Positions 9,801-50,719 of a DNA stretch of 64,000 bases are shown piece by piece (within the stretch, counting starts at the first letter, position 1; every line of letters starts with the position of its first letter). Where the stretch lies: positions 53,382,001 to 53,446,000 of the forward strand of contig OZ287752.1 in the NCBI GenBank assembly GCA_965649765.1, given 5' to 3'. The position numbers were made by a program, and so were the translations under genes. The stretch comes from Bispira polyomma (taxonomy: Eukaryota). The notes under the pieces were generated by a model. The model was given only the letters and a program-made list of their open reading frames with translations, had not been told where the DNA came from and searched no databases.

Positions 9801-9904
9801 AATGATCACAACTATATAAACTTAGCACATTTGGGCGTTTATTCCTAAATACAATTCCTCAACATTTAATATTGTTAAAACATCAAACTACTAGTTTATC
9901 GACA

Positions 9905-10135
9905 GATTAAGTTTAATTTAAGTTAAGGGCACCCCAACGTGATCTCAGGTGACCGTAAAGATTTTTGCACTAAGGGTGACATAACTTTACTAAGGTCACC
10001 ATAAATTAAATCAAAGTTACTAAACTTTTTGAGATTGAGGGTGACTTAACTTTGCTTAAGGTCACCCTTAAAAAGTGAATTTACTAAATGGAAGGTTACC
10101 TTAAGGGCAGCCGAGTTTAAGGTAAACTTTATTTT
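9905..10135. repeat. Array of TAAGGTNACCTTAA-type imperfect palindromes
   Basis: TAAGGTCACC (about 9991 and 10057), AAGGTTACCTTAAG (about 10092); about 67-bp internal repeat AGGGTGAC(A/T)TAACTTT..TAAGGTCACC. Confidence 0.75.
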
Positions 10136-10398
10136 TATGGTACAACATAAGATCTTCTAACCGTACATTATAATTTAAATCCATGCTTTTTGTTTTTAAG
10201 CTAAAATAATTTCATACTGGTAAATATTAAGCTGAAAAATGCTCTAATCTATAATTCAGTGTTATTTCCCGAAAAATTAAACCAATAAATTTATTTAGCT
10301 TTACTCAATATAATGATCTATACTGAATATTATAGGCTATACTATGTTGGCTATACTAGCTGCTATAATATCTAAATATAACTATAATAGCTAATCCA

Positions 10399-10590
10399 AG
10401 ATGGCCTAGTAGCTAGAAGGGTTAGCTTCATCATCACTAGTCTCTCACAAAATGTGGGATTGAATCCAATTTGTTCCCTCATGTGGCAAAGTTTGTCAGG
10501 TACTTGCCATAGGCCGGTGGTTTACAATGCTGCAGCACTCGCTTTAACTACTGAAAGTGGTGTAAAGCCTAAACCACATTCAAATTCAAA
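10399..10590 (+). mobile_element. tRNA-derived SINE (same family as 54922-55175)
   Basis: A-box-like TGGCCTAGTAG, shared ATCACTAGTCTCTCAC, core TGTGGCAAAGTTTGTCAGG..GGTGGTTT, and ATTCAA tail. Confidence 0.7.
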
Positions 10591-12029
10591 CTAACTGAGC
10601 CCAATTAGTGTGTCCATTGCTTTACTAAGTAGTAAAATCTGTATTATAATACAGGTTATAGTTACTTATCTACCTAAATTAACTAATCTGTGTATTATGA
10701 GCTGTACTTTAATAATGAAGCCACTTACTCTGTTCCTGGCTGGCTAGATGATCCTTTCACTGTCAGTAGTAGTCCTGACTCGTGACCCCTCAAGGTAAAA
10801 AATTTTCCCTCGATGACCTTTTTCTTCTTGCTAGCCATATTTTAGGTACAAATGGCAGTGGAAGGTTCAGTACGAGACAACTTGGGGTTGACTGCTAATT
10901 GGAGGTACTCACTCAATGGTATGTGTATGTGTGTGTGTGTACAAAGGTTCAGCCGGCTGGAGGAAATTATAAATTGTCAAGATGGCTGCCGATACTTTGC
11001 TTTTGAATAAAAGTTGGCAGACAATGTTAAGTGGATGTGGTGCTGACAATGTTAAGTGGATGTGGTGCTGATAAAGTTGTTTTGTAGTAATAATAGGCTG
11101 TGATAAAAGCTGGGTATTTTGACAATGTTAAGGGGATATTGGATGCTAGCAGAATTGGTAAGGGTAAGTTTACCTTATATAAGGTACAGGGATTTAGCAT
11201 TAGTAGTAGTTCAAGAGAAACCCTTAAACTAACTAGAAATATGCCTCTGATATTGCAATGTTTTGTTGTAAAACGTGGATTTTAAGTTTAATATTTAAGT
11301 AATACCTTAAACTGGAGACAACTTTTAAGTATAATAGTACAAATAAATTGACTGAGAAACTAATGTTGAGACAAACTTATGATAGTGGACCTTTATCTCA
11401 CCCACTAATATTGCAAAGTCCAACAAGATACACTTCATAAAGTTATGATTTTTATCAACGCTCCTTGATAGGTGGTGGTGGTGTGTGTGTCTTTTTGCAA
11501 ATAGGCTATAAAATCATTGTACTTGAAAACAATGTGGGCAATTAAAATAATACCTCCACTTCTTATAATTACAATTATAATAGAAAAAAATCTCCATTCA
11601 ATAGAAATAAAATATTTCTTCAGTTTTATTTTACAAGGAGATATATTGTTAGTATTTTTTTTTATTATTAAATCCTGTCCTTTAAGTATCTTACTTAGAC
11701 GACAGTGTAGGTGTAGTATGCAGTGTCTATACTTGTTTGACAAACTTACTGATAAGAGATTTATGAGTGATAGTCTGCTTTTGGGTCCATGTTTGTTACA
11801 ACAGTTACTACTAAACTGCATTCATAAGATAAATATATTTCACTTAATATTAGCTGCAGACATAAATAAGTGTTCTATGGTTTTTGGGTAGTGAAATACT
11901 TGTAACAGTATCAGTGCTCTGACCTAGAGTTTGAATATTTGACCTTGGTTGAACTAGCAGTTGGGATTATATATTTTAATTTGCTACTACACATATAGTT
12001 AACTGGTTAAAATATTAATATCTAACAAT

Positions 12030-12350
12030 GAGGCCACCTTAGTTAAAAATTTAAGTTTAGTGTAAGATCACCTTAAGAGTGACTTAACTTGACTAAATTT
12101 AAGGTTAACGTAAAATCAATTAGAAATTGATTTTTTCTAAAGTTTAAGGTAACCTTAACTAAATTTACTATATTTAACTTGGCCTAAGCTTTACATGTGT
12201 CTAGTTAAGGTTACGACTTAAGTTTAATTAGACTATAAGTTTACAATAATTAAAGGTAACCTTAACAACATTACAAGATTTAAAATGGCCTAAGCCTTAC
12301 ATGTGTCTAGTTAAGGTTACGCAAAGTTTTGACTATAAGTTGGCCTTACT
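12030..12350. repeat. Array of TAAGGTNACCTTAA-type palindromes with a 106-bp direct repeat
   Basis: Perfect TTAAGGTAACCTTAA near 12145; GGCCTAAGC(T/C)TTACATGTGTCTAGTTAAGGTTACG at 12181 and 12287. Confidence 0.8.
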
Positions 12351-12884
12351 AGATAAAATGTGTAAGCTTTATATGATATAAATGATAGAAAGAGATACAA
12401 CAACCACTATACAATAACCACAATAACTACTATAAAACTATAAAAAAAAGTACATAAATACTAGCTTGTTAAAAACTAATAAAATAAAAGGTGCATGCAT
12501 ATAATGTCTTTTAGAGTCCAAGGCACCAGAATCTCACTGAACCTTACGTTGTTGAATAATTCAGCCCTAAACATCGAGTCAGTGTACTGTACGTATATAT
12601 ATATGTATAGTGAGAAGATCTTTTAATTACAATTACAAATTTAAGCACATGGATCTTGGATGCTTGAGGCTTGCTTGGCTGACAGGCTTTCTTGATCATT
12701 TACTTTGCCATGCATTGCGAGGATCTTTGGACTGAAGCTGACACAAATAACTGTTAACACCACATATATAATTGTCATATATCTATATAAGGACAGCTTA
12801 AGTTAAACACAGTTTTGACAACATGATATTAACATACAATTAGAGATGAGGTAAGCCTGGAAATTTCAGTAATTAGTGTGGAGA

Positions 12885-13073
12885 CTAACAGGAAGAAGCC
12901 TGAAAGGAGCACACTGAACCATAGGGATGAAAACCTGCGGCAGAACCATGTTGCTTGCTGGTCAAAGACCCGACCCCAGGATCCTCACCGCCCCTGCGCC
13001 TGAGGTGTAAATTAAGGCTGACAGAGTCTTCACTCTTGACACTTGCTCCCGAAGCGACGTAAAAAGAGCCCAT
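12885..13073 (-). pseudogene. Small ORF with ubiquitin-like C-terminal motif (LNLHLRRRGG), TATA upstream
   Basis: GC-richer 62-codon ORF; minus-strand TATAAA at 13169-13174 and YY1-like GCCATCTT at 13125-13132. Confidence 0.35.
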
Positions 13074-14162
13074 ACAGGTGAAGTTGGGGATGAGGTTTGG
13101 AGTAAAAATAAATTCAGATTTTTTAAGATGGCGTTCTGCCCTTCACAAATTCTTAATTTGAAGCGAGGTTTATAGGTTTAAGCGGGAAAATGATCAAAAA
13201 TGAGGTTAATTGCCAGCCAATCCCTAATAGAGGTCAACCTAACCAGAATAGCTTTTTAAAAGGATTTAGGGTCAGCACTGACCTTACTAACCCCGTTAGG
13301 TTTACCTAGCACACTCTCCCATTATTTGGTATGTTTACTTACTGCCCCATTTCAGTTTAACTGTAACTACAAAATCTGACATGGCAACCATATTCATGTT
13401 GTAGGCAGCGAAAAGAAGGCATAAAGCTGGGCAAGAAATGGTTAGAAAAATGAGAGGAGGGAGGCAAGAGGGAAACAAGGAAGGAGGGAGAAAAGAAATA
13501 AAACAGGAATGCTGATGAAAAAGGGGTAACAGAGCTAAGGAGCAAAGGCAAAAAATTTGGAGGATTTGCAAAAAGTGGAGGAAGACTACCAATTATATTG
13601 GTTTTATCAGACTTCCTTTAACCTTCCATGCGAAAGTAACACAATAATTGAAACTTAACAAAGTGTTTATGTACTACATTTAAGTAATTAAGTTATGATG
13701 GCTATGGTATGAATAATTTACCTCCCATGGAATCTTAGGATACGTAATACATGTATTTTAATGAGAATTACAGGTGTCATTTTAACATAGACATACATCA
13801 CAATGAGCCAACCATTTAAGAAGCCAATTGCAAGTTTATAATGTGTTCCTACTATATTCCTTTGATGCTTCAGACTATACTGTACTTTTTAATTTGATTA
13901 CTTGAACGTATTTTCCGAGAATACATTTAGGATAAAATAAAGGAATGCATGAATTAAAAAACATTATTTAAACACTAAACAAATGAATTATTCATACATT
14001 ACCCATTATAACTTAACTAATGTGGCTTATTACTTAAACAGTTTCTCAATTTAAAATGTAACCGTTGGGAAAAAAAGGTTAAAGGAGTTGCTTAAATATG
14101 CTACTCCCCATTACCTCCCTCACCTGACCTTACCCCTTCTATGACTCATACCTTGCCCATAT

Positions 14163-15490
14163 TTACAAGCATAAGCAAATTTCTTGACCAAAATCGCTTT
14201 TTCTTTGACCACTGCTATTGTGATACGCTAGCCTATACAACGTTAACTTTAACCAATCAAATTTGTGCTTGCAGTGTGGACACCAGTCTAGATCATTGTT
14301 TTTGGACTTAAAACCGCGAAATAATAGATAAAACTCAATGCATGATGCTGTAAAATTGCAATTTCTGCACTTTACTACAATGTATGTCAGTGTCTTAAAG
14401 CCTGTCCACACCTACACGATCTGGAGCTATGTGTGTGTGACGTTTTTTAATCTTGGAAATCTTAAATCTTTTGAAAGCTAGTACAAACATAGTACAAGGT
14501 AATGCTAAAGTTAGGATCTCTGGTGCGTTCCTTCAGGGATGTTGGTTAATGGATGATATTGTTCTGGAAACATATTTGTTTGATCCACTGCCACATTCAC
14601 TTCAAACTGTTTGAAATAATCGTGGCAGAGCTCTTCCTTTCTGACAAGGATGTCTTCACTTGTCTGTATAAGTAGCATAATGTAGCATAACATAGCAGTA
14701 AGCAGTAGTAAGTAGTGAGATCGTCTCTACTCGTCTGTATTCGCTGCGGAATGTTTCACTAGGTAGCAAAACGCACCAGAAAGCAGCCGTAAGTAGCAGT
14801 ACAGTAGATCAACGTAGTAGTAGGTAGTTATATCCTAACAGTAAAATGTTAGATTTTTGCCCCGCTTCATCTGTATAAGTACCAACATTGTCACGAAACA
14901 TTACAAAACGTCACAATCGACTCCACCTTATGAAAATGACGTAACCTTGACATGAAACTACCACGTTTTCATCTATATTGCTTTGCTACATTGTGGGATG
15001 TTAGCACTTACAGGTGTGACCAGGCCATTAGTCACGTTTAGAGAAAATAGAGCTACAATAGACAACTGAGACTAGAAACTATGCTATAGGTTTCTGTAGT
15101 GATTAATGGCCTAGATGTTCTAGCACTTTCACCAAATGACAGTATTTCTGTACTTTATTGTTATATATGTCAGCCTTTTCAATCCAGTTCTTGGAAAGCA
15201 GGATACAAATAGCAATGGTTTAGTACATACACCATTGGTCTTAAAAGCCATAAATGGTCTTGATATGCTAACAAATGTCTTGGGACATCTACTGACATTA
15301 CATCTGTAATGTATGTCATCGTTTTCAGCATACTTCCGGGAAAACAGGAAACAGTTAGTTTGTAGCAATTTAGCACCTACACTATACATATTTATAGCTA
15401 TTACTAAGCTTGTTATTTTATGACTTTCTCTGAGTCTAATCGCAGTATTTCTGTACCTTTTTCCTTATGTATATCAGCTGTTTAGAAAAA
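14163..15490 (-). pseudogene. Cluster of decayed compact Cys-containing ORFs with an internally repeated domain
   Basis: TGFKTLTYIVVKCRN (14411 ORF) versus TGLKRLTYITIKYRN (15389 ORF) versus KQLIYIRK/RYRN (about 15480); CxxC pairs CRNC and CPHC. Confidence 0.5.
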
Positions 15491-15744
15491 ACAGGGTGAT
15501 AATGGCAGTCATTTTACACTACAAAGCTTTAAAATGGGCTTTTATGTTATACATTTTTACTCAACCTCTTGATTAAAACTACCATTTCCAAGTAGTATTT
15601 GAGGTATCAGTTATATACTGATTGCAGTACAAAATAAGGACTCAGAATAGACGTATAACTGGATTCCCACAGACATGCACTAGTTATTCATTGGCCCTTT
15701 ACTCAACACAGTTTATTGTCAAAATATGTTCAGTAGTTTTTGCA

Positions 15745-15965
15745 TTATTATTATTATTGTTATTATCAAACTTTGTCAGCGTTTATTTTTGATTATATCA
15801 AATTCTAAGGCGCTAGTTTAAATGATAATTAAAATATTAACTGAAGACTGGGAGACAATGATGAAGGGAATCGGTAAACAATTATTTTTTAATCTGTGGC
15901 TGATGAAATGTTAGGAGTTACCCTGATGCAATAAAGTAAACTATTCCACAGCTAGGGGAGGACCA
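15745..15965 (-). mobile_element. L2-clade LINE 3' end
   Basis: Minus strand encodes LWNSL, then AGCGCCTTAGAA..AAACGCT, and ends in an (AAT)n tail at about 15745-15760. Confidence 0.55.
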
Positions 15966-17511
15966 CCAAATACAATATTTATTTTTATTAAAATGAACCC
16001 TCGATGCCTGTATTCTTTACTTATTAATATGTACCTGTAACCTGAGGTAATAAAATATCTAAATAATAAATAAAGTATGAGCAGATCACATTCAATATAT
16101 TAATGCCAATAAGTAGAAACCCTGCTAAGGGTTAATTTATCCAGGAGAACCTGACTGAAGGATCATGGATTAATTCAGTAGGTCCCATGATTTTACGTAA
16201 GACCACCTTTAAGTACAAGTAATTACCTTAATCTAATTAGATTGTAGCCTAGGTGATGTTGTCTGAGGTTCAGACTTAGTCTAAGCCAGCCTTACGAAGG
16301 CTGTAACTAAATAACATAAATAAAAACAACAGTACATTTAGTCTTTTTTGCTGATGTTCTTAATGATCTAGAAATAACAAGAAAAACCCTTCGGTATTAG
16401 GCTTTAAGTCATTATTAAGTAGGAAATAAAATAAAATAAGTGAAAACCAGAAGGAACCTTAGCAGAGTGTATACTGTAAATTGGTTTGGTAGTTTTCTTG
16501 TAATCCTTGTGACAAACAAAATCAACCAAGCAATAGTCACAGAGAAGGCCATAACCACTGTGGTAGAGGTACATACAGATGTTATTGTAATTAGCTTATG
16601 TCTAATTATGAATAAATTATTTGATTTAATTATTTCTGCAACAGATTATTCACAATAGTCACAACCACTATACCCCGTTAATTGTTAGAATAATTAAGTG
16701 ATTGTAAATATCTAATAACAATGGAACCTACATTTTCTGACATTCATATTCAATTTGAAGTTTGACATTAAATTTTTTGTTAATTGAACTTTTTTCAGTT
16801 CCCTTATAAATCTACACCAAGACAATGACAATACATACGTGATTATAGCCATGGTAGTATATTGTTCAATTTATAAATAATAATTCACGAAGTATAGAAC
16901 AACTGATGAGCAATAGCAACTTACAACATAGGCATACTAAACTTTGAATGCCAGTCAATACACTTTTGAATTTAAAAAATATTTGATTTAAATTATTTTT
17001 TTTTTTGTTAATACATTAGGTGATAGCATGGATCCACATTTTACCACTTTCTAATATAACTACAACTGATTAAGCTTAAAAATTCTGCGCCTCAGCAAGG
17101 CATATTCAGCCTTAAGTATTTTTATAGCCTCATCAGTCCCTGCCTTCTTACTGTGAGGTCTATTTCCTTTGGCTGTATTTCTCTAAATAACTCAGACTCA
17201 ATCCAAACTAAAGCTGTAATGTCCAGATCGTTGTTAATATAATGAAGTTAAATAAAATCTGATAGCATATTTGAATTCAGCACCGAAAGCCCTTCAAAAA
17301 TTCATTTAATACAAGTATTGGTTATTTCCTTACAGGATCATTTCCACAGTCTTTATATGAGTTTAATCTGAATTTGAGATTAAATCATTTTGGAGAATAC
17401 GGGACCAGCCTGAGTCATAATGCAGGAAAACATGCTTGCATAAAACAGCTCCTCCTATAGGAGGATAATTTTCTGCAATGCCCTCTTTTTTCACCTGTGT
17501 ATGTGCTTCTA

Positions 17512-17862
17512 TGTGGTCTCTGTGGCTCAGCAGTTACAGTGTCAGACTTTGGATCTGGGGGTCCCGGTTTGATCCTTGTTGCAGGCCTGGATGTTGTATC
17601 CTTAGACAAGGTGCTTTACATAACATTGTCCCTCTCTACCCAGGTATATAAATGGTCGGTACCTGACCAGCTAATAGGTGTTAGTCGTTGTGTGCCGTAT
17701 ATGGCAGCATGGCTAGTATGCTTCCTGGAGGAGCTGAGACTGAGCACTTGGTTGACAAGTGGAAGAACCTGGGCTTGGAGGTGTAAATTGTCAAGTCGCC
17801 TAAGACCTCAATAGAGGTGATATCAGACTATAAACCTACACACATTTACACATTTTTACATT
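17512..17862 (+). mobile_element. tRNA-derived CORE-type SINE
   Basis: A-box TGGCTCAGCAG, B-box GGTTTGATCC, CORE-like GTTGTATCCTTAGACAAGGTGCTTTAC..CCAGGTATATAAATGG, and (ACATTT)n tail. Confidence 0.75.
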
Positions 17863-20330
17863 TGCTTAATCTCCACTGGCCAAGAGTATAAAGCCAGAAT
17901 GTTTATGTAACTTTCTTTCTTTCTCTGTCTCTTTCTCTGTACAAGTCACCCTATACAATCTGGTATTACCCTAGCCCTCCACATGTAAATACCTATAATG
18001 TAATCTTCCCATATTTCCCTAGGGTACTTTAACAGGCTTTTCACAACCTGTCTGACCCCACTAACCTTGGCCTACAAAAGCACCCCCCCCTCCCCCCCTT
18101 GTCACCCACTGGCCTGTCAGTGTTTCGTGGATGTCGGGCTGTCACTTTAGATGAGTGGATACTTAATACAAGACACCATTTTGTCTAAAAGTGCCTCTCC
18201 CCCCCCTCCTCTTTCTGGCAGACTGGGAATATATTGTGTAATGTCTGTATAGTGTTATCATTAAGGAAAGGAGTGTGTGACAAAGCGACTGTAAATTTAC
18301 TACAAATATTGTTTGGAATGCCAGCCAAATGAAGCTTTCCCTCTACATAGGAGTTCATATATCCAAAAAAGTGACTAACACTTGCAGTGTACAATTTATA
18401 CTATATGATTGTAAATGTTCTTTCTCTTTTTGAATATTTAATTATAATGTGGTACTGACATATAAAAACATGTTACACAAGGCTAAGTATGTGATATAGT
18501 ATTACATTATTATAAAAAAAATTATATTTCATTGAAATGTTCGAAGTATTTTTATTGCGATTAAACAGGTTTAAATGATTTGAGATTACATATTAACATT
18601 TTTTTACCAATATGATAAACAGATTACCACTTTTCGGTCTCATCGTAGACAATCATATTGCACATCCAGTGATACTAATCGTGAAGAACATATAGACTTA
18701 TCATCAACTTATGAATGCTTTTGTTGGAGGTATGTACTCTACTAAGTGTCATTATAGTTATATTAGTTCACATCTTATAGGCTGTGTTGATGTAAAATGG
18801 CTCATCAACCTCTAATTGAAGGCTTAATGATGACGGGAAAAGCCTTTCCCTACCAACGTCAGCTACCAGCCGATATCCCCCGGTCCCCCAGCCACCCTGA
18901 GACTATTAAGTTTATATTTAGATTCATGACTTCTGTCAGGGATCTAAATGCAATCCATCTTGTTACTTTTGTAGGCAAATGGGGCCCAAGTAGGTTAGGA
19001 TGGGCATTTTATATAATATTTTTTTTTCTTGACAAGGTAATTTTGTATGTAGTTTGGTCAGTAATCTGTAGGTAATTAGTCTTTTTGTTTACTTAAGTTT
19101 TGACCTGGTTAATGTAACATTTATTCTCCTAACATAGATCTGTCTGTAACATCAAAGAGAAAGAAGTCTCCTTATGGGACAAGACAGATCCTGTTACTTA
19201 TACAAGAGTATTATATTATGCATTAGACATATTTGTGTTTGTTTTAAGTCAGATAGAGTTGCTGACTAGCTTGAGACAGAATCAAGGCTAATAAACCACC
19301 AGTTTCTGTATCAAAGAGTCAAGAGAAGATCATTTCATTTGCCTAATATATAAGAATTTGTTGTCTATATGTTAACCTTTCCAATAGATCTTGTCTATAT
19401 GTTAACCTTTCCAATAGTATACAGTTCTTATCAGTGGCTGGGAGATGTCAGGAATCTACAATAAAAGTCAACCTGCTTTTACCTGGCTGGTCTCCGGGAA
19501 AATCCATGTTTTATCTGAATTTTATGCATTTTTATGCATGATTGGTATATCGCACCCAGTCAGACAGAGGTTGCGATCTCCTACTGATCTCCTAAGAATT
19601 GCACAATATATTTTTGTTGTTCTCTGGTAGTTTTCACTAGTTATAGGCCCAGTTTAGTCAGAAGCTGGTTTTTGCTGCTGCACTAAAAATCCTGCGGCCG
19701 AGTTAAATGGTTGGAGGTAGTTCGTAAGTGGTTGCATGTGGTTTTACAAATGACATATTTGAGATTTTGCTGGCCAGAAGCACCTGCTACTAGTCGCTGA
19801 TAAACTCACGATCTTCTTCTGAGTGTGACCATCTATTTGACGACAACCAATATTTGTTTGGTTAAAATATTTTATTGTGACACAATCTGGCACGTCCATA
19901 AAGACTAATATTGGTACACACACCCTAGTAAATGAGGTGAACAAGTCACAAAAAATACATGACATCCTTATCTCTTATAAAGTACAAGACAGTGTCAATT
20001 GTTAAGACAAACTTTTAATAGGTATTAATACTTAGAAAGCTATCTACAATTGAAAACCAACCCTACAATTTAAACTTAATCAGACATGAAAAACATCATG
20101 AGTGCAGCCACCCTGAGACTATTAATTAAGTTTAAATTTCTATTCATGACTTCCGTCAGGGAGGATCTAAATCTAATCCATCTTGTTACTTCTAACAAAA
20201 AAACAAAGGGATATCCAATCACATAGGCAGTAGTTCTAACTACAAACGGTTGGTGTAAGTGTCTATCTATATTGCTTTAGTTTTATTTTTATTTTCTTAA
20301 ATCGAAAATCTAAATCAAGAAAAAGTCAAA

Positions 20331-20555
20331 TTGCATGTCTTCAAAATATGTTACCATTTGTTCGGGCCAAAATATTTGCACTTATCAAGCATATATTTCG
20401 ATTACTATTTTGAAGAGATGACCCTGTATTCTCAGAGGTGTACTTGTAAAGGTCATACTTGCAGGCAGGAATCTACCCGAGCCTTTTCTAAGGCTTCAGT
20501 TTGCTATATCATGATGGAATTCAGATTTGAATTTACAGCTGTGCCTAAAGAATAA
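20331..20555 (+). pseudogene. Decayed member of the compact xTLY..C..(G/R)QE ORF family
   Basis: EEMTLYSQRCTCKGHTCRQESTR resembles RMTLYQCVQGSKTCHCGQEPVR (about 22100-22180, minus). Confidence 0.35.
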
Positions 20556-21469
20556 CACACTAATTTATGAACATAGAGAGCCTAGGTTCGATCCCAACTC
20601 ACAACGTCTAGGTAGAGGCAGATATAGAGTAGCCTAGAGGATCACTTTGTGATCCAATTTTGGCCCTGTTATTTGAGTCCTGTCACAGTGTCAGACTGAA
20701 GAACCTTATACCCCTGTTCCACTATGCTGACCATGACCTTCGACCCTAACAAGTGTAAGTTTTGGGGCTGTTATCGTGGACGATTCGCCCCACTAACGAC
20801 CTATCTCTTGATGAAATAACTTATCTTTTGCAATTGGGGAGGTCACAGAGGTTTTCAAACATATTAGATAACCTCTGCGAGTGAGTGTGTATCGGCCGAT
20901 CAGTCGGGCCCCCTCCAGAGTTATCTTTTCCTTTTAATGACTTATCTTATCCTTCTAGTAATTTCACAAGAAAATTGTTAATTAACACTTTGTATACCAG
21001 ACTAAGATAGATTAATGTAATGAGTATAATTTTAAATACGATGCAGCAGAATGACAAAATTTAATTTTATAACTCTTGTAATTTTCCTATACAGATGTTT
21101 GTTCTTTGCAAGCTGAAGAATCCATTGTAAAAATTTATACCAATGACTGATGGTGTAAATACTTATAAGTGTGGATATATTATGCTTAATCAAATGTGTA
21201 TATGCGTACCAAATAAGACTATGTCACAATCCTCAGCCTCAAGCAAGGCTAACACATCCACACAATCTTTCCCACACACCGGTAGCTCATTTGTTTGGTT
21301 AGGTTTTACAGGCTTTAGGGTAAAAATTCCCTTTGCTACTCACGTACAGTACCAGCAAATAACTTAGGGTTCTTTAGTACCCAGTACACATCTTGGATCT
21401 AGGCACCTAGCCTTTCAACAGGCACATCGATGTGTGGTTAAAAAGCATAATATTAAATTAATTATTAAT

Positions 21470-23510
21470 CTCATATTTGGTAATTTTTTACTGGCGTCAT
21501 CACAAAGTCTGGTCTTATATTATACTTTTTGAAATTTATTGTCAAAATCTGTGTTAATCTGATTTTTACCATTTTTTTAAAGACAGAAGAAATAATATAA
21601 GCTTGCTGGGCCTCCAAAAGTTCCTCAGTAAAGGCTGAGATTAAAAATCTACCAGTGGAATGTTTGATACTGTGTATCCAAAAGTCGAATTGTAACCTAC
21701 TGTACAAAGCTTAAATACTGGGAAACCGGGCACATCAATACATATGGTAGGTGGATATTGATTGCTGGTATGGTCTTTAACAGGCAATGTGATTTCTAGT
21801 AGTATTATTTCTGGAGATACTCCACTATACCACTTTTTTGTGGGACACTTTTGACGTTAAAATGATGCTAAAATATACGGAACATTGCATTTTTCTTGTA
21901 TTTATTTAGTTTCGCCCCTGCCATTGTCTTGTCATTGATATCCATTATTGTCACGTGTTTAGAATAAAAACAGCAAGTTTATGAAAAATTCATTAAAATT
22001 AATATTTTCAATGCTCTCTGAGCATGCATGAATATAAACATACACATACAAAACGGTCACCAAACACAACACACTAGTACCACTTTACAATTGTGAACTG
22101 TTCTCACTGGCTCTTGTCCACAGTGGCAGGTTTTAGAACCTTGGACACATTGATACAAATGGGGTCATCCTAAAATTTCTCACTTCAGGCAACCTACTTA
22201 CAGTTATACTGGTGTGGAGTGAAGAAAGCACGTAATTTGGTGTTCTGCATTCGAAATAAATGGGTATAGTGTATTGAGTATAATTATGAATAACAGTAAC
22301 AAAACATAAAGGTAAATGTGGCTTCATATACAGCACTAAAGTGTAGGTGGCAAAGAGGGTAGCCAACTCACTAAGGATCGCAGAGCACATTGTTTCGATT
22401 CCAACCTGGGGCGATGAAGTACACATAGATGCATAATGGCTGAAATAATGTCCATCAGTCGTTGGGTTCTATCCCCAGTGACTGGTTAAAAAACTTTGGG
22501 TACTTTGATAAAGGGTCATCCTTAGGTTTCTTTCTTCAGTAAAGGGAAAAATACTTGCAGTTGCTGGTTGGCTGTACTTGCACAACAAAGAACAAGTTAG
22601 TGCATTGAATTTCAAAGCTTGATAAAGTCAATATACAAATACCAATTGAGATGTATTGTGATAACGTTATGGTACTTTAATGAGAATTATGAAATTAACA
22701 TAAACTGGGTCCCGGTTTACAATTGAGTAATTCCTTGGAGAATATAAATATTACTGTTTACTGTTTAGACGTTTTCAAAGTTGTTTGGAAATTAATTGAT
22801 GAAAATGTTACAATGAAACCGACCATCTCAACAAAGGCTACAATTGTAACGGTAATTTTTTTTATTATTTTTTTTCGTTTTGAAATATTATCCATATCAC
22901 GTGAGTATACAATCAAAATCCAGTAGATATGTCCAGTAGTATTGCAAAACAACTTGGTGAATAGCATAGAGTGCGTTGTATATAAATAGATCACTTCACA
23001 GACAACATTTACTTGAAATCATATTTTAGAAGTTCACAGGCTTAACTGAGCAGAAGGGTGTTTAGTAGGACTTCATTGGTCAATGTAATATAAAAACATA
23101 CATTGATATATTTTCTGGTTAGTTACTTTTCACTATGGGAAATAACACAATTTTTTTTCATGATGTTAAGTCTTTTTTTAGATAAATACACATATTCAGA
23201 GAAAACAGACTAAATTCATCAGAAAATAACAGACCACCCCTTGTACAAGGTTGATTCAGTACACAACTACCTACTTGCCTCAATACTATTACAGTCTTCA
23301 GATCTAGTCCAATGTAAACAACATCAACTTTCGAACCATTAAAGAAGTATTTGTTCTCCTTAGGGGACACAAAGCCCATTTTTTTCACTTTTACTCGTTG
23401 TTTAGTAAATATAAAATGTTTAAGTGCAGTGAAAAGCATCAATGTAAACTCAGTAAACTCAAAATAATTTGGTAGTGCCCTATGGGAAATTCTAGAAAAC
23501 AATTCTTGTC
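21470..23510 (-). pseudogene. Decayed compact ORF cluster with repeated domain
   Basis: EERNLRMTLYQ (about 22510-22540) and EVRNFRMT/LYQ (about 22150-22185) are duplicated; ORFs 22133-22426 and 23158-23502 are interrupted by stops and frameshifts. Confidence 0.4.
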
Positions 23511-24229
23511 TTATTCTAATAAGAGGTTAACATCTAGGCACTTGAATTCAAAACAGAAAGCTAAAAAAGAGTAACACCATCCCCAATGGCTGTTTACATG
23601 TAATTAATCCACAGGTCAAGGTCATTACTGCAAGTATAGTCATTGAACTAATACAATTAAACAAATACCTCTTTTAAACAAAACCTTCTTTAACCACTGA
23701 ATATAGCTTTAAGGCTGAGCATGTGGCCCATTGAAAGTGTTGCTAATTTAAACCCTTTTTATTCTATCATTACTTATTTTATAGGTGAGAGGAAAGCAAT
23801 TGCCCCGCAAACTATAATCTATATCTATCAAATTCACTACATGTCTGATTATACCCGAATACGTTACATATGTACGGTTAAGATATCCATACTATAAGTT
23901 GTGATATATGTTTAGTTTAGACATATGTTTCTATTGGTCATAGAATGAATCACATACACACAGTAGATATTCAATAAGCTTGTGGAATACACATTTTCTG
24001 AATATGTTGATACAGAAACAGAATGTACTCAGGAATGCATTAGTAATTAAATAACGTGCCTAATTGTAAAAGATTCGGTTTTAAGTGTGGTAAGTTAAAA
24101 TGTGAGTATCCCCTCTTACAAATACAGCAAAATAGTAAGGGTAGTTTCACTATCCTAACATGGTAATTTACACTGCTGGTATATCTAAGCTGCTAGTTTT
24201 CTGTCAGATCATCATAACTAAAATGTTAC

Positions 24230-24390
24230 TTTATGCTCTTAAGGTGGCGGTAAATTCATCTTAACTAAAAGTAAGCATACTGAATGTCATTAAGATGACA
24301 GGAAATTCAGCTTAACTAAGGTTACACACATGATAGCCGTTATGAAGATTATGATAGTTACATCATGATTACTAAGGTTACCTCAGTAGT
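24230..24390. repeat. About 51-bp tandem repeat with TTAACTAAGGTTAC(C) core
   Basis: TTAAGGTGGCGGTAAATTCATCTTAACTAAAAGT / TTAAGATGACAGGAAATTCAGCTTAACTAAGGTT / CTAAGGTTACCTCAG. Confidence 0.6.
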
Positions 24391-26374
24391 ATCTAGGCTT
24401 GCATTCACCACAGGTATAAATTGTTTCTTTATATACTCTGGTTTTCCTTGATTTATGCAATTTTACCGGTATAGTTTATTCATTGAATGTTTACATATTC
24501 ATCAGTCATAATATTTTTATTATCACAATGCTATACGTACAGTCTCTCAATATACTGATTTTTGTTTCAAATGTCTGTTTCAAATATCTGTATTATACGA
24601 CCCAGAATCCTTGGCAACCAATTCCATCAATAAAGTAAACTTGGTATATCGGTTTTCCATCCAGGGAAATAAATCTGATTTAGGAGACCTCTGGGTGCTT
24701 CCACAAGTGGACAAAGTGATTTGTCCCACTCAAGACCAGGCTAAAAATAAAACAGCTCTCCATCACTAATATGGGGTTGAGGCTATTACCTCCATCAGGA
24801 GGTTATGCTTTAAACCCGGTCTGCTTGTTGGTTTGTTTGTCAGAATGATCATGCAACAAACTACTAAACCAATTGATACTACAATTGCAATTAAGGAATG
24901 GGGAGATGTAGAAACCAGTACATGTTGGTGCAAATATTGATACTGTTAAGTGAATAGTGGTGCAATTCACTGTGTACTTTAATGAGTTTTTACCATATAC
25001 CTCCAAACTTACTATGAAATGGGTTTATTGGTTAAATAATATTTTGCCCCACTTTTTGATATGCTATCCAATGGCCGACTTTGACAGGTCTAGGTCTGTA
25101 ATTTAAGGACAGTCTCTTTCAATTTTATCCCCTATGATGGAGGTTCATCTTGTTGTTTCATACTTTTTAACGTATTAAGTAATATTACGATGGCCAGGAA
25201 TTTTAGTAAATGAAATACTGTAGCTATATAGGTCTGCAAATTATGTAGATTTATGTGAATATTATTTTCAGTCTAATACTTATAAGAAGTAGGTTATGTG
25301 TTCTCCTGGTTTGTTTGTGACCACAGAAAAGAGAATAAAGTGGAAGAATGGGGTTATAGGTCAAAGAATACCTTACATTTTGAAGGGGATCTGCGTATAA
25401 GGGGGGGGGGGGATCCATAATTTAATTTACTTTTTTTGGCGCAGTTGCACTTTGGCAAAAGTAAGCACTCTACTGGTTCCCTCCTAATATAACAGTCACT
25501 GCAAAGAAGATTGCATGACAAATAAACCCCCCAATTACTGAAAGCATACTTTAAAAATATTATGGTATTGATTGGAACTTAAATGTGTACCAACACACAG
25601 CCAATCAAATGTTAAATACCAACAAATTGTTTACTGGGGCAGTTTGTCTCCCTCTCTTTGTGTCGTCAATTTTTAACTGAAAACCAAAGAGTGAACATAT
25701 ATAATTTTCTTTCCCACCCACTGCCCTAATTTTAGGTGGAAAATTGAAATGATTGTACATTGTATGTTGTACCCCTTAATGTAGCAGGTAGCTTCTGGTG
25801 GAAGGTGTTCAAACCCTAGACCGTGTGGGAGGTTAGTCCTGTCCCCTCAAGAATATTTTACTAGATGGGAAGCTGTAGCATACTTTAATATTTTAAACCT
25901 TTTAAAATTTTTGTAAAGTTATAAATAGCAGCCAATCTTTCAAATTAACTTTCTCAAACCTCGATTAGACTTCCTAACTTAAACTCAACACCAACTTGAC
26001 CTTGCCAGGTCAAGATTTATATATACATGGCAATACAAAATCTCATCATAATTTTTTACCTCAAATCATCTCTTTTTAAAGAGTAAATATTGCTAAAGTT
26101 TATTATAAGCGACTGTGTATGTATATTTCTCATTTTATTTGATAACAATTTTCAAATCCCATAAAATCCAAATGAATCACACAATGCTGAAATTGTCTAT
26201 TTAGTTCATCTATTTATTACAATAATGTAATAGAGAATGCTATATTTCCTATGCTATAAACATTACCTTGATATAGATTATCGGTCTGACACCATTAGTC
26301 TGTGTTTCCATGAAGCTGATAGCAAATCCCTACTCTGTAACTTAAAAGGGGAAAGAGACTTCTGTTTTCTCTGT

Positions 26375-26520
26375 TAAACGTACAAAGATGGCTGGGTCTA
26401 GAGCTTTCTCTGTTGCTGTCCCTATATTGTGAAATAGTCGCCATGTTATGGTTATATCACTTAAAACACTTTCTGGTTATGTTAAAAAGCTTTAAACTCT
26501 TAAAACTCGCCTTATTCCCT
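26375..26520 (+). mobile_element. L2 LINE 3' ORF2 fragment
   Basis: GSRAFSVAVPIL*NS motif homologous to 160-210 and 61840-61880. Confidence 0.6.
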
Positions 26521-27084
26521 CCTTATACACCGTATTACGACCTAATATTGTCCTAGCGGTCAGTCATATGATGATGTCAGCTACATGGAAACATATGGCA
26601 AGGTTTGAATTAAAGTCTACCACATTATTTAAGGGTTTCCAGGTATCCGACACAAACATCCAGCATTGTAAACAAACCAGAACTCCCATATTCTTTGGAT
26701 AAATTATTTGATTTTCAAAAAAAATGATCAGAAAATCACACCCTACAATCTTCTGTCAGGAGTGTTAGTTATTTTCTGTCAGCTAGCAGCAGTCTGTTAC
26801 ATGGTCACATATGCTTATCATACAATCAGCCCCATCATTGCTAAAACACGATTGGAAAAAGGAATAGTGTGATATGAGTTGGGGATGGGGAAAGGGATGA
26901 ATGTCAAAAATTGCTTCACCCCTGCTTTACTGTATACAAAGTATTGTGTAAGTGGGAATTACAGCTGGTAATAAAAAAAACTATCACTTATGTTGAACCC
27001 AGTAGTGATAACATAGTTTTATAGTAATGGTGATATTTCTCTGTACTACATATACTATATAATTTTATCTAATAGTTTTAACAG

Positions 27085-27385
27085 TTAAGGCCACCTTAAC
27101 ATCAACTATTTATGCATTACAGCAAGATAGTAATGCTATTGGTACCTAACCTTAACCTTAAGAAGAAACTATTCTAAATTTAAGGTGACCTTAAAATGGC
27201 CAATCTTAAATCTTCCTATTCCAAAACTTAAATCCTAAGGTTACCTTAACTTACGTTAAGTCAATCTTACCTTCAAATAAAAATTAACCTTAAACTCAGA
27301 TTTAACTTAAGGTAACCCTAAACTGGGGGGGTTAATCCAGTTTAAGTTTCACATTACGTTAAGGTCTTCGTATACGTTAAGTTGG
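27085..27385. repeat. Array of TAAGGTNACCTTAA palindromes
   Basis: Perfect TTTAAGGTGACCTTAAA near 27179, TAAGGTTACCTTAA near 27236, TTAAGGTAACCCTAA near 27307; begins AGGCCACCTTA like the 12030 array. Confidence 0.8.
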
Positions 27386-29079
27386 TTTCAATTATTTTAT
27401 ACATATATACTATATATCTACATTTTACATATTTTTAATGGATTAAATTTAAATGTACTATAATATGTATATAATGGATAGTATTAACACAGAAAAATTA
27501 AAAACTAACTTGCCCAATTTATGTGTTTTATTATGTGTTCACTGCTACATCATCCACTAGCTCACAGTTTAAGAGCCACTGTGCATTTTTAACACCCTTA
27601 TTGATGTGAGGCATCTTTTTCAGAGCAACTCCAGATTTAATTAACAATCAAGAAGTTCATAAACATATCCAGTGCATAATGCATTGAAATTCCAATGGTA
27701 TAAATGTGTACATTGTTGTTATATATTAATGTTTAAGATTACAATATAAAGAATAAGGGTCACACAAATACACATTCCCACACAAACCAAGGTTCTCCAA
27801 ATATTCCACAAGTCTGGTTTAAGTCACAAACCTTATTATCATTATTTCTCCGTGCTAGTGATGAGTAACACTATCGCCAGCCTAATTGACATCAATCATT
27901 TGGTTGTCTATCTAACAATCCAAGATTTGTAACATAGCTGTTTGCTTTTTGGAAATGTCGGCTAGCTTACTACTACCGAAGTTACTATTTGAATCTATAT
28001 TTTAGAAGTCAGCACACAGTAATCAAGTGTGATCATCATTATTACCTCCACCAAGCAACTTATATTTTCACTCATTTTTCAATGTTATGTAAGAAAATAA
28101 ATATCAAAGATTTGCTTATTGAATGTTTATTATTGTTTTCACTGGTTTCTTATTAAGACAATGTTAACTTGGGACATACTTGAATCATATTTACTAAATA
28201 CATTGTTAAAAGATATCTAGGGCACTCAGTGGAGTGCACCTAACCGCCAAGGTGCTAAAACTGCTCCCCCCAAATTTTGGATCTGCCCTTCTTCAAAATT
28301 TAATATATGCGTCTTTGGTCAATATTGCACAACATGACTGAATTAATACAAATCAGTTTAGTAGTTATTATAAAAATTCCAGTGACAAATTAACGAACAC
28401 AGGCAAAACACATATAAGCATAACAAATTAATCATTGATTACATACTGATCAATTTGTATATCAACTATTTATGAAGAGTGTGTTGCTTTTAAAATTAAC
28501 GCCTATTTGCAGACTGTAAATTAGGCACCTTAAATTTCAGTAATTATGTAAAGCTAGCTGTTAATTTCCTCAATTTAATAACACTAATTGAAGCAATTAT
28601 AATGCAGCAACACAATACATGCAGTAAAGGAGGAACATACAATTTTTTTTTTTTAAATTTGAATAAATTTTTTGCTTGAACCAATTTCCTGGCGTGGAAT
28701 AGAATTACATAATTCAATTTTCTGTGCCTAAAAAAATATTATTGCAAAACAAAATTACACCGAAATGCAATATGCTACGTTTTACATGATGTAGACTTTA
28801 TTGTTATAATTATCACATTTTACGGATGCACAGACATCAAGGCCCTTATTTTTGCAAAAAATAAATTAAACAAATTAAATAAATATGGTACGGTTTCAAT
28901 GTCGAAGGACAGAAAATAGGTCGACCACAGTTCCTCGGTGTGTGGGCAGATGATAGTTATTTAACCAACAACTCGCAGTAAGAAAAGATTGCGGTTAAAT
29001 ACTTTATTCTATATATATAATTTCTACTACTAACATATTTTTTATATACAGTTTCTTTGTAGAATGCGTAATACTGTTG

Positions 29080-29389
29080 CGGGCATAAGGTCCCCTTCAC
29101 TCAAGTGAGTTTAAGGCCTAGAGCTTATAGTAAGCTTATGTTTAGGTGACCTTAAGTACAATGAGTTTAAGAGTGTAAGTTTGCCAAAGTTGAGTTTGAG
29201 TCCCAACTTAGAGGATTTGAATTTAAGGTTATGAGTTTAAGTTTGGTAAAAATTTTGATTTAACTGCAAACTTAAGAGATTAAACTTTAAATTTATGCTA
29301 GTCTAAAGTTTGACTTAGGGTTTTAAGTCGAACTTTAGATACTTGAGTACAATATGTACTAATATAATGACGGGGGGGACCTTATGCCC
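29080..29389. repeat. Inverted-repeat-bounded, multi-hairpin structured region downstream of YR
   Basis: GGGCATAAGGTCCCC (29080-29094) / GGGGACCTTATGCCC (29375-29389); nested ACTCAAGT/ACTTGAGT; hairpins at 29220-29293 and 29302-29339. Confidence 0.85.
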
Positions 29390-29465
29390 AAAAAAGGTAT
29401 AATATTTATTGTTATTTTGACAGATCTTAAGCCCAAATATTTAAGTTAGACCACCAAGCCCCAAA

Positions 29466-30449
29466 CTAGTAGGTGTTTTGTAGGACATCTTTAAAGGAAT
29501 CTGCAACTTGAGTACCAGCATCAGCAGAGTCTGAGATGTAATGCCAAATGCAATCCGACGTCCAGGTGCCTTGTTTTTGAATATCCTGAATCTTGACATT
29601 ATTGTTAAACGCAAAGGTGGCACCTGAACGTCGGAAGGCGTGAAAGGTCAAGCCAGAGTATTGACCACCAAGTAGGGATAGTACATTTTTGAGGTGCCTT
29701 CGCACACGTGTCCGTTAGTGGAACCCACAAGCCTTGGAGTTTAAACTGAAATAATGGGAGATTTTTTCCTTTTGGTGAGATGGCTAACACAGCTTTCAAG
29801 GTCTGAACAGGACAAAGAATTGAATTTTGTATACTTGGGATGGTTAGCAATCGAACTGCATCATGTCTCTGCAGTGTCTTAGACCATTTGATCATAATAA
29901 CTGCATACCCTGGCTTAAAGAAAACATCAGCTCTAGCTATTTTCCAAAGAGGAGAGTATGACCCCATTGAATGATGACACAGATTGGATAAACGCAGAAA
30001 TGTAAAAAAACTTGTCAAATAAACAGCCTTGAAAATTTGGCCCATGTAAGTACTATCACATTTACTAATCAGAGCCCTAAGCAAGTGCACATCAAAAATT
30101 TACTTCAACTTCACCTGTAAGGGTCTATGCATAGCCAAGGCTTTAGTGAAATAAGAAATTCTCTGGTCAGAAAATACTTGAACATCTATATGAAACATAA
30201 CACATTTTGCCTTCACAGCCGAGATGTGATTTACTACCTGAGTGGCCGAAACACCATTGAAATTTAGAAACTCTAAATATGCTAAAATTTGCAACACAGT
30301 CACCTTGTGGGGAGGCCACGACATCAAGGCTCCAAAAGCTAGGAACTGTCGAAACATTCTGTCATATGCTTTATTAGTGGCTGGAGTGAGAGCTGAGTTC
30401 AGCCTATCACAAGCCTGTCTCATCAGAGCCAGACTCACAGGGTGAGTGC
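29466..30449 (-). pseudogene. Tyrosine recombinase of the Ngaro-like element (stop at 30100-30102, frameshift near 29700)
   Basis: FFTFLRLSNL (catalytic R), KWSKT, FHAFRRSGAT (HxxR), GTWTSDCIWHY (W and catalytic Y). Confidence 0.92.
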
Positions 30450-30473
30450 CTGAAAAAGAAAAACTAAAACCTG

Positions 30474-32972: not shown

Positions 32973-32978
32973 TTTTTT
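32945..32978 (-). promoter_or_regulatory. Putative -1 programmed ribosomal frameshift signal (A AAA AAC + 7-nt spacer + hairpin)
   Basis: Minus strand GCA AAA AAC TGA GGGG CCACTGC TTGGAT GCAGTGG; the -1 frame is open into pol. Confidence 0.7.
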
Positions 32979-33957: not shown

Positions 33958-34104
33958 GACTTGAGTGTATATTGAATTAAAATACTAAAACCAAATAAAC
34001 AGTATAAAACATAAAACACTCTTTGTCACCCAAACAGTATTTGAATTTTCCTAGTGCTTCTGCTGACGAACGGTAAAAGGCGGAAAAATTTGAAAGGGGG
34101 ATGG

Positions 34105-50700: not shown

Positions 50701-50719
50701 TGGCATCTCTGATCGTATT

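What the first reader, a model, noticed from the sequence alone, without database searches (positions are those of the whole stretch)
9905..29389. Palindrome arrays link Ngaro YR-retroelements to a family of cargo-gene units (candidate satellite or helper-dependent system)
Seen: arrays built on the palindrome TTAAGGTNACCTTAA occur at about 9.9, 12.0, 16.2 (weak), 24.2 and 27.1 kb. The same motif lies just downstream of the YR gene in both Ngaro copies (TGTTTAGGTGACCTTAAG near 29139; TGTTTAGGTCACCTTATAG near 51439), although those copies are in opposite orientation. The non-Ngaro arrays have no RT or YR beside them; they instead flank compact decayed ORFs that share peptide motifs, and at least one ORF has its own TATA box. 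Established: YR retroelements are thought to integrate through circular intermediates, and non-autonomous elements keep the cis-signals of their partners. Inference: these may be non-autonomous, gene-carrying elements mobilised in trans by the Ngaro RT/YR, with the array as the cis-signal. Alternatives are an old endogenous DNA virus with baculovirus hr-like palindromic arrays, or an unrelated MITE family.
Basis: partly seen in the sequence, partly recalled or inferred. Interest (0 to 1): 0.8.

Follow-up and report, generated by a model that had tools for sequence, protein, structure and literature searches.

The report
Ngaro retrotransposon tail repeats, not cargo units
The palindrome clusters are real, but each is the repeated tail that follows the recombinase gene of a different Ngaro retrotransposon family; they are leftover element ends, not a separate gene-carrying satellite system, and the short motif they share may be a binding site the elements need.

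Summary
The TTAAGGTNACCTTAA clusters at 9.9, 12.0 and 27.1 kb are real: 15 hits against 0.67 expected in the window, and 2793 exact sites in the genome against 10 for a reversed control. The 24.2 kb cluster is weak and the 16.2 kb one is not supported.

They are not a separate family. Each cluster is the 'B' split direct repeat of a distinct Ngaro family. B starts 7-53 bp after the tyrosine-recombinase (YR) stop codon. Other genomic copies of each array family lie directly beside YR/RT/RNase H genes.

The window holds:
- a lone B (9744-10138);
- an isolated B-X-A tail unit (11910-13313);
- a lone B (27023-27582);
- a simple Ngaro copy (28927-34193);
- a decayed YR plus tail (about 50968-51500).

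I found no cargo genes. The DNA between arrays is other interspersed repeats, with no Pfam hits and no shared peptides. Isolated tail units resemble the AB repeats of Cafeteria and SIRE/VIPER. They are a minority: 4 of 23 family A X copies.

One feature may be new. AAGGTNA half-site arrays persist in otherwise unalignable tails, across Ngaro lineages and in a second organism's elements. This suggests a cis-acting protein-binding site, but that is inferred.

Another first-stage note (s1-590178) reported the same array downstream of a YR gene elsewhere in this genome.

The parts
9744..10138 (-). Lone 'B' terminal repeat (about 395 bp) of an old Ngaro family ('family C'). It carries four palindrome copies (9990-10131).
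   Evidence: Family extent comes from the own-genome search (92 candidates at 70-87% identity). In L085 the same repeat (71% identity, E about 1e-30) occurs twice, as B1 at 3565-3966 and B2 at 4750-5151. B1 starts 19 bp after an intact 309-aa YR ORF that follows gag, RT and RNase H.
11910..13313 (-). Isolated tail unit B-X-A of Ngaro 'family B'. B is 11912-12407 and holds the array at 12062-12265. The non-coding X plus A is 12408-13313. The unit has both element termini but no ORFs.
   Evidence: At least 288 genomic candidates at 82-93% identity. Alignment to L074/L075/L082 shows B-X-A followed at once by a second B and then YR. In 8 of 10 independent loci a YR about 50% identical in protein to the family A YR lies right beside B. 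X has no ORF above 85 aa.
24240..24373 (.). Weak cluster of three half-sites. It may be a decayed tail or chance.
   Evidence: No hit at up to 2 mismatches. No DNA similarity to the other arrays.
27023..27582 (+). Lone 'B' terminal repeat (about 560 bp) of Ngaro 'family D', with four palindromes (27085-27321).
   Evidence: Low-copy family at 67-84% identity with sharp ends. The two best other copies (L002/L012 and L003/L013) have YR, RT and RNase H coding sequence immediately upstream on the same strand.
28927..34193 (-). Simple copy (A-ORFs-B) of the young, abundant Ngaro 'family A'.
- B: 28927-29454.
- YR pieces: 29605-30438.
- RNase H and RT pieces: 30474-32770.
- gag-like ORF: 33061-33957.
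- A: 34037-34193.
The reading frames are broken by several stops. This copy lacks the A2-X-B2 tail.
   Evidence: Pfam hits to RVT_1, RVT_3 and Phage_int_SAM_4. At least 304 B candidates at 94-96% identity. The sharp end at 28927/8 has a different flank in each of 27 loci. The 5' end at 34191-34193 is confirmed by L083.
29074..29396 (-). Motif-rich core of the family A B repeat. It holds one near-perfect palindrome (29141-29155) and many TTTAAG-type motifs. It is closed by a long stem whose arms carry the half-sites TAAGGTC and GACCTTA.
   Evidence: Inverted repeat 29074-29095 / 29375-29396. RNA fold of -88.2 kcal/mol, z = -7.5.
50968..51216 (+). Decayed C-terminal part of a YR gene ('family E' remnant). 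It keeps the conserved SGA..AF...VP.Q.IQ..GT box, then an in-frame stop, then TSDCVWRY.
   Evidence: tblastx and tblastn matches to the YR C-termini of families A, B and D. There was no hit when only the family A window proteins were used as queries.
51380..51500 (+). Degenerate tail of the family E remnant, with the motif at 51441-51455.

Best explanation
The palindrome clusters are the motif-rich core of the 'B' split direct repeat of Ngaro tyrosine-recombinase retrotransposons. B starts 7-53 bp after the YR stop codon.

This genome has several Ngaro families, here called A to E. Their B regions do not align with one another, but all carry iterated AAGGTNA / TNACCTT half-sites, often as TTAAGGTNACCTTAA.

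A complete element reads A1-gag-RT/RNase H-YR-B1-A2-X-B2, where X is a non-coding spacer. The following derivatives also occur:
- simple A-ORFs-B copies;
- isolated A-X-B tails;
- lone B repeats.

The window contains one simple copy (family A), one isolated tail (family B), two lone B repeats (families C and D) and one decayed YR plus tail (family E). Unrelated interspersed repeats lie between them. There are no cargo genes.

Shown: the identity and architecture of the pieces, their association with YR genes elsewhere, and the persistence of the motif across lineages and in a second organism.

Inferred (about 1 in 3): the half-site arrays are binding sites on double-stranded DNA for an element-encoded protein, either the recombinase or the ORF1 product. 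Such a protein would mark the B side of the B|A junction for circle formation or recombination. Isolated tails would then be by-products of recombination at that junction, as proposed for AB repeats and SIRE.
For: Family A:
- Twenty-seven independent loci centred on B give 19 simple copies, 3 composites (B2-X-A2-B1-ORFs), 2 isolated B-X-A units, 1 lone B and 2 variants. All share the same sharp end with different flanks.
- Of 23 near-full-length X copies, 19 are directly followed by the A2|B1 junction.

Family B:
- B-X-A-B-YR is seen in L074/75/82.
- YR lies beside B in 8 of 10 loci.

Family C:
- L085 has gag, RT, RNase H and an intact YR, followed by B1 and B2 at 97.5% identity.
- Both B copies match the 9.9 kb array.

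Family D: YR, RT and RNase H lie beside the array in L002/12 and L003/13.

Family E: a YR remnant lies 250 bp upstream of the 51441 motif.

The arrays share nothing alignable except the motif. The half-site is 25-28 times enriched in each.

A second organism (ENA sample ERZ22147071) shares only 68-72% nucleotide identity, in YR coding parts alone.
- There, 5 of 10 Ngaro loci have AAGGT(N/C)A arrays confined to the first 450 bp after YR and repeated in B2. The five p values range from 5e-7 to 0.026; the weakest is L091.
- One locus has a different iterated motif, TTACTAA nine times.
- On the YR tree, array-bearing elements occur on most major branches.

Literature: the canonical A1-[ORFs]-B1A2B2 structure and isolated AB repeats (PMC8547959); SIRE corresponds to the A2-B2 region of VIPER (PMC6681497).
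Against: - The genome-wide test was not run. Association is shown family by family, on loci chosen by similarity to the arrays.
- Family A, the one whole element in the window, has only one good palindrome. Its half-site enrichment is not significant (p = 0.13-0.26).
- Four of ten elements in the second organism lack any such array.
- How lone B repeats arise is not explained by simple recombination between A or B copies. Some may be artefacts of nested insertions.
- Nothing here shows protein binding. A 1-bp spacer between 7-bp arms is unlike a recombinase crossover site.
Confidence: 0.85

Rival explanations
1. The arrays mark non-autonomous, gene-carrying units that lack RT/YR and are mobilised in trans by the Ngaro machinery, as a satellite or helper-dependent system.
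For: Isolated A-X-B units with both element termini exist: window 11910-13313, L051 and L062. They are what a trans-mobilised derivative would look like. The same open question exists for SIRE/VIPER (PMC6681497).
Against: - No cargo: X regions have no ORF above 85 aa, and the X spacers of families A and B are unrelated.
- ORFs between the arrays have no Pfam hits and no shared peptides.
- That DNA is made of other repeats.
- X is mostly part of composite full-length elements (19 of 23). Stand-alone copies are few and not a separately amplified, low-divergence group.
- Two of the three arrays in the window are lone B repeats without an A end.
- The arrays belong to families other than the Ngaro copies next to them.
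Confidence: 0.07
2. The half-site arrays are a host transcription-factor binding cluster (an enhancer or promoter module) carried in the terminal repeat. AAGGTCA is like the extended half-site of monomer-binding nuclear receptors. The arrays would drive element expression rather than recombination.
For: - The arrangement of half-sites is loose. It includes a palindrome with a 1-bp spacer, everted pairs with 1- or 7-bp spacers, and direct repeats in L094 and L096. Loose arrangement is typical of factor-binding clusters.
- The same half-site is kept although the YR proteins are only 25-50% identical.
- In circles, tandems and B1-A2 junctions, B lies upstream of A.
Against: - The central base is free. 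Family B mostly uses GGTAACC / GGTTACC, which lacks the AGGTCA core.
- One lineage has replaced the array by a different iterated motif (TTACTAA). This fits a co-evolving element protein at least as well.
- No expression data could be obtained.
Confidence: 0.2
3. The arrays act as single-stranded RNA or cDNA structure, with many mutually complementary copies folding into a multi-branched domain. This structure would be needed for packaging, priming or template switching during reverse transcription.
For: All four tails tested fold far better than dinucleotide shuffles: z = -7.5, -4.7, -3.2 and -3.9. The family A array is closed by a long stem.
Against: - Low folding energy follows automatically from any array of palindromes.
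- The predicted folds differ between families.
- No Rfam family matches.
- Conservation of the specific bases GGTNACC, rather than of pairing, points to sequence recognition.
- No covariation test was possible between unalignable tails.
Confidence: 0.15
4. The arrays are an independent MITE family, or the homologous-region-like repeats of an old endogenous DNA virus.
For: The arrays are short, AT-rich, palindrome-rich interspersed units. Some copies stand alone.
Against: - The units have no terminal inverted repeats; their inverted repeats are internal motif pairs.
- Other copies sit directly after YR stop codons inside Ngaro elements, and are duplicated as B1 and B2.
- No viral genes are present in the window ORFs scanned.
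Confidence: 0.02

Closest known systems
Ngaro retrotransposons (DIRS order) with split direct repeats A1-[ORFs]-B1A2B2
   Same: - gag-like ORF, RT/RNase H and a tyrosine recombinase, with no methyltransferase domain.
- Internal repeats lie just downstream of YR.
- The 5' end (A) is repeated after B1, and B is repeated at the 3' end (structure as in PMC8547959 and PMC4157794).
   Different: - A non-coding spacer X sits between A2 and B2. It is 946 bp in family A, and 123 bp to about 1.2 kb in the second organism.
- Most family A copies are simple A-ORFs-B without the A2-X-B2 tail.
- B carries conserved AAGGTNA half-site arrays. I found no description of these in the searchable literature.
Isolated AB repeats of Ngaro in Cafeteria burkhardae (Hackl et al. 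2021, PMC8547959)
   Same: Units made only of the terminal repeats are scattered in the genome. They are interpreted there as recombination products 'reminiscent of solo LTRs'. The window unit 11910-13313, L051 and L062 are of this kind.
   Different: Here the isolated unit includes the X spacer. Lone B repeats without A also occur.
SIRE, the short element corresponding to the A2-B2 region of VIPER in Trypanosoma cruzi (PMC6681497)
   Same: A short non-coding unit with the 5' and 3' ends of a YR retroelement plus a private internal stretch. Whether it is trans-mobilised or just a remnant is an open question.
   Different: SIRE is abundant and short (about 30 bp internal). Here the units are about 1.4-1.6 kb and few compared with the composite elements.
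Baculovirus hr repeats / MITEs
   Same: Clusters of imperfect palindromes.
   Different: No viral genes, no terminal inverted repeats, and demonstrable membership in Ngaro terminal repeats.

Membership tests
Ngaro (YR retrotransposon without methyltransferase) | Reverse transcriptase and RNase H domains | tested here: met
   Window 30474-32234: RVT_3 scores 28.2 bits, above its cut-off. RVT_1 hits are weak. Homologous RT/RNase H lies beside the arrays in L002/12, L003/13, L074 and L085. RVT_1 is recorded on the neighbouring genes of the second organism's loci.
Ngaro (YR retrotransposon without methyltransferase) | Tyrosine recombinase encoded downstream of RT/RNase H | tested here: met
   Phage_int_SAM_4 and Phage_integrase hits fall below Pfam cut-offs. 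The conserved RSGAT and W.S..V.RY boxes are present. There are 42 relatives at E below 1e-10, several with PF00589 on record.
Ngaro (YR retrotransposon without methyltransferase) | No methyltransferase-like domain (this separates Ngaro from DIRS1/PAT) | tested here: met
   No such Pfam hit in any ORF. In L085 the RNase H ORF ends at 2556 and the YR ORF starts at 2617, which leaves no room.
Ngaro (YR retrotransposon without methyltransferase) | [quoted passage not shown] B1 A2 B2) | tested here: met
   Shown for family A in L042/43 plus L083, L046 and L057/58, for family C in L085, and for the second organism in L086, L088, L089 and L091. It is not met by the window's own family A copy, which is the simple A-ORFs-B form.
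B terminal repeat of an Ngaro family (for the arrays at 9.9, 12.0 and 27.1 kb) | Other copies of the same repeat lie directly after a YR stop codon and/or are duplicated as B1 and B2 | tested here: met
   - 12.0 kb family: 8 of 10 loci.
- 27.1 kb family: the two best copies.
- 9.9 kb family: L085 B1/B2, and a decayed YR in L084.
Non-autonomous, gene-carrying element | A conserved ORF or gene inside the unit | tested here: not met
MITE | Terminal inverted repeats and an existence independent of an autonomous element's internal structure | tested here: not met
   No terminal inverted repeats. The units are parts of Ngaro elements. Target-site duplications were not examined in detail.
Endogenous large DNA virus with hr-like repeats | Viral core genes near the arrays | tested here: not met
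   No Pfam hits to viral genes in the window ORFs scanned. Only ORFs of 65 aa or more were scanned.

The most novel reading that the evidence does not exclude
The AAGGTNA half-site arrays in the B repeat are the recognition sites of an element-encoded protein, either the tyrosine recombinase or the ORF1 product. That protein would assemble the complex that closes or recombines the circular intermediate at the B|A junction.

Lineages that lack the motif would have swapped it for another iterated motif (for example TTACTAA), together with a change in protein specificity.

If so, this would be the first defined cis-acting site for eukaryotic YR retrotransposons. Isolated A-X-B tails could then be mobilised in trans.
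Probability: 0.3. Interest if true: 0.6.

Novelty: new member of a known kind. Interest (0 to 1): 0.3.

Why it matters
How Ngaro and DIRS elements recognise their own ends and integrate is still unknown. No binding or recombination site has been defined for any of them.

A short half-site kept in the post-recombinase repeat gives a concrete sequence to test for recombinase or ORF1 binding. It is kept across lineages that share nothing else there, and in two organisms.

For annotation, the practical lesson is this. In this genome, stand-alone TTAAGGTNACCTTAA clusters should be read as Ngaro tail relics, not as a new element class.

Tried and rejected
- Alignment of the arrays with one another and with the two Ngaro tails: nothing beyond the motif. 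They are not one repeat family.
- tblastx self-comparison of 9-29 kb for shared peptides: only tiny hits in repeated DNA.
- Pfam on 12 ORFs between the arrays: nothing. Ten more ORFs at 36-53 kb gave only a weak RT fragment.
- tblastn of the family A proteins against the window: no second copy. The 51 kb remnant appeared only when other families were used as queries.
- L084, a pair of 9.9 kb-family repeats 4 kb apart: only a decayed YR trace and an unrelated NADAR exon.
- Rfam on the window (9-35 kb) and four loci: no family.
No genome-wide association figure is therefore given.
No expression, transcript-end or circle-junction evidence was obtained, and read laying was not used.
- Nuclear-receptor reading of AAGGTCA: considered, but weakened by the free central base.

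Full report
**1. Observation**

The window is G000:C5:53382001-53446000, from a 1.04-Gb, 75-contig eukaryotic assembly at about 34% G+C.

TTAAGGTNACCTTAA with up to two mismatches occurs 15 times, against 0.67 expected.
- The hits cluster at 9990-10131, 12062-12265 and 27085-27321.
- Single hits lie at 29141 and 51441.
- The genome has 2793 exact sites against 10 for the reversed pattern.
- The half-site hexamer TAAGGT/ACCTTA is 25-28 times enriched in each of the four arrays.
- Clusters of three or more half-sites also pick out weak spots at 11172-11304 and 24240-24373, but nothing at 16.2 kb.

So the motif and three arrays are real, the 24.2 kb array is marginal, and the 16.2 kb array is not supported.

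**2. The arrays are not one repeat family**

The arrays at 9.9, 12.0 and 27.1 kb and the tails at 29.1 and 51.4 kb do not align with one another beyond the motif itself. Each is a separate interspersed family in the genome.
- 27023-27582: low copy, 67-84% identity.
- 11910-13313: at least 288 candidates for its first 497 bp, at 82-93% identity.
- 9744-10138: 92 candidates at 70-87% identity.
- 28927-29454: at least 304 candidates at 94-96% identity.

**3. Each family is the tail of an Ngaro element**

*Family A* is the element in the window, on the minus strand at 28927-34193.
- It has a gag-like ORF, RT, RNase H and YR pieces broken by stops.
- In 27 independent loci, its end at 28927/8 is sharp with unrelated flanks.
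- Complete copies read, in the window's plus orientation, B2 (528 bp) - X (946 bp) - A2 (157 bp, equal to 34037-34193) - B1 - YR ... gag - A1. This is seen in L042/L043 continued by L083, in L046 and in L057/58.
- That is the canonical Ngaro split-direct-repeat plan A1-[ORFs]-B1A2B2 (PMC8547959; PMC4157794), with an extra non-coding spacer X.
- Among the 27 loci, 19 are simple A-ORFs-B copies like the window's, 3 are composite, 2 are isolated B-X-A units, 1 is a lone B, and 2 are variants.

*Family B* is the 12.0 kb array.
- The window piece 11910-13313 aligns end to end with the B-X-A part of composite copies. In those copies a second B and then YR follow (L074/75, L082).
- In 8 of 10 independent loci, a YR about 50% identical in protein to the family A YR lies right beside the array, on the expected strand.

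*Family D* is the 27.1 kb array. The two best copies have YR, RT and RNase H just upstream.

*Family C* is the 9.9 kb array.
- L085 carries gag, RT, RNase H and an intact 309-aa YR.
- These are followed after 19 bp by B1, and 1185 bp further on by B2 (97.5% identical).
- Both B copies match the window's array at 71% identity.

*Family E*.
- The window ORF 50968-51189 and the next few codons hold the conserved YR C-terminal boxes with an in-frame stop.
- The motif lies about 250 bp downstream.

B starts 7-53 bp after the YR stop wherever this could be measured.

**4. No cargo**

- X regions have no ORF above 85 aa. The X spacers of families A and B are unrelated.
- ORFs between the arrays have no Pfam hit.
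- There is no significant shared peptide.
- 13.3-27 kb consists largely of other high-copy repeats. An example is a roughly 640-bp family at 14395-15032.
- A SINE-like repeat lies at 10396-10559.

**5. Are isolated tails mobilised?**

In family A, X has about 51 genomic candidates, against 300-500 for B. Of 23 near-full-length X copies, 19 are followed directly by the A2|B1 junction, so they belong to composite elements. Four stand alone.

Isolated units are therefore a minority. Recombination between A1 and A2, or at the B|A junction, can explain them. That is the explanation given for isolated AB repeats in Cafeteria, and it is one of the two options discussed for SIRE/VIPER. Trans-mobilisation of these non-coding units is not excluded, but nothing here requires it.

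**6. The motif as a conserved feature**

The intact YR of L085 finds 42 relatives. Those on long contigs that I looked up come from one ENA sample, ERZ22147071; one more (L097) comes from a second sample. The ERZ22147071 loci share only 68-72% nucleotide identity with this genome, and only in YR coding parts.

Among its 10 Ngaro loci sampled through the protein, not through the motif:
- Five have AAGGT(N/C)A arrays confined to the first 450 bp after YR: L088, L090, L091, L094 and L096. The five p values range from 5e-7 to 0.026 (L091).
- In L088 and L091 the arrays recur in B2.
- L094 and L096 show everted and direct arrangements of CAAGGTCA.
- One locus has nine copies of a different motif, TTACTAA (L095).
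- Four show nothing comparable.

A locus from another sample (L097) has a tandem 17-mer instead. On YR trees, array-bearing elements occur on most major branches. This fits an old feature with losses or replacements.

Family A itself is a weak case: one good palindrome plus half-sites in a long closing stem.

**7. Mechanism**

Shown: the position of the arrays (inside B, 60-350 bp from the YR stop), their iteration, and the conservation of the half-site with a free central base.

Inferred: recognition as double-stranded DNA by a dimeric protein. My preferred reading (about 0.3) is an element protein that marks the B side of the B|A junction. Two things support it:
- One lineage replaced the motif wholesale.
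- The element ends carry their own palindromes that look more like crossover sites: GCTAACGC-TAGGG-GCGTTAGC, 4 bp from the family A 5' end, and a GGTCAG-CA-CTGACC palindrome near the family B 5' end.

Rivals are a host-factor enhancer (about 0.2) and an RNA or cDNA structure (about 0.15). All tails fold with z between -3.2 and -7.5, but that follows from any palindrome array. No Rfam family matches.

**8. Limits**

- The origin of lone B repeats is unexplained.

**9. Verdict**

The palindrome arrays are real, but they are ordinary in kind: terminal-repeat relics of several Ngaro families clustered in one region. The satellite or cargo idea is not supported. The conserved half-site array is a modest, testable new observation on a known element class. 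A first-stage note elsewhere in this genome (s1-590178) reports the same array downstream of a YR gene. The fold noted in s1-616416 is the core of the family A B repeat.

Noticed in passing
window 34166-34186 and 13266-13290: The 5' terminal repeat (A) carries its own palindromes close to the element end.
- Family A has 8-bp inverted arms around a 5-bp spacer, 4 bp from the terminus.
- Family B has an extended version of the array motif (GGTCAG-CA-CTGACC within TTAGGG...CCTTACTAA) about 25 bp from the terminus.
These look more like recombinase crossover sites than the B arrays do.
   Followed up: partly
G000 contig C5, about 53.0-54.2 Mb (the window lies at 53.38-53.45 Mb): Family A copies cluster here. 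Among roughly 60 distinct best hits genome-wide, four fall in this 1.2 Mb (C5:53002280, the window's own copy, C5:53606265 and C5:54130605). About 0.07 would be expected. The window alone holds pieces of five Ngaro families. This may be a preferred landing zone, as for DIRS-1 at Dictyostelium centromeres.
   Followed up: no
window 28926-28928 and 34190-34193; loci L042-L070: The base before the conserved CAGTTCC end varies among copies (A, T, C or G). The B1|A2 junction reads tttc-ACA-gttcc, and the window copy has ACA at both ends. This suggests a very short overlap (CA or ACA) at the crossover rather than a target-site duplication.
   Followed up: partly
window 10396-10559: High-copy, roughly 140-160 bp, SINE-like repeat (80-88% identity, many loci) between the 9.9 and 12.0 kb arrays.
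   Followed up: no
window 14395-15032 and 13375-14060: Two other abundant interspersed repeats. One is a roughly 640-bp family at 77-81% identity. The other has 72-nt inverted arms (13647-13718 / 13986-14057). They probably account for the look-alike short ORFs at 14163-14411 and 15129-15389.
   Followed up: partly
window 37500-55000: Three diverged copies (75-87% identity) of a several-kb unit, at about 38-41, 42.4-48.4 and 51.7-54.7 kb. RT fragments lie on the minus strand at 44325-44931. This is unrelated to the family E YR remnant.
   Followed up: no
window 59058-60362 (+): The longest ORF in the window (434 aa) has no Pfam hit.
   Followed up: partly
L095 3515-4000 and L097 3356-3800 (other organisms): Post-YR tails with other iterated motifs: TTACTAA nine times in L095, and a tandem 17-mer (CCTAATTRARTTTAACC) three times in L097. 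Iterated short motifs after YR may be a general Ngaro property, with lineage-specific sequence.
   Followed up: partly
L084 1718-2041 (+): A NADAR-domain exon (E = 4e-24) lies between two copies of the 9.9 kb-family repeat on contig C7. It is probably a host gene.
   Followed up: no
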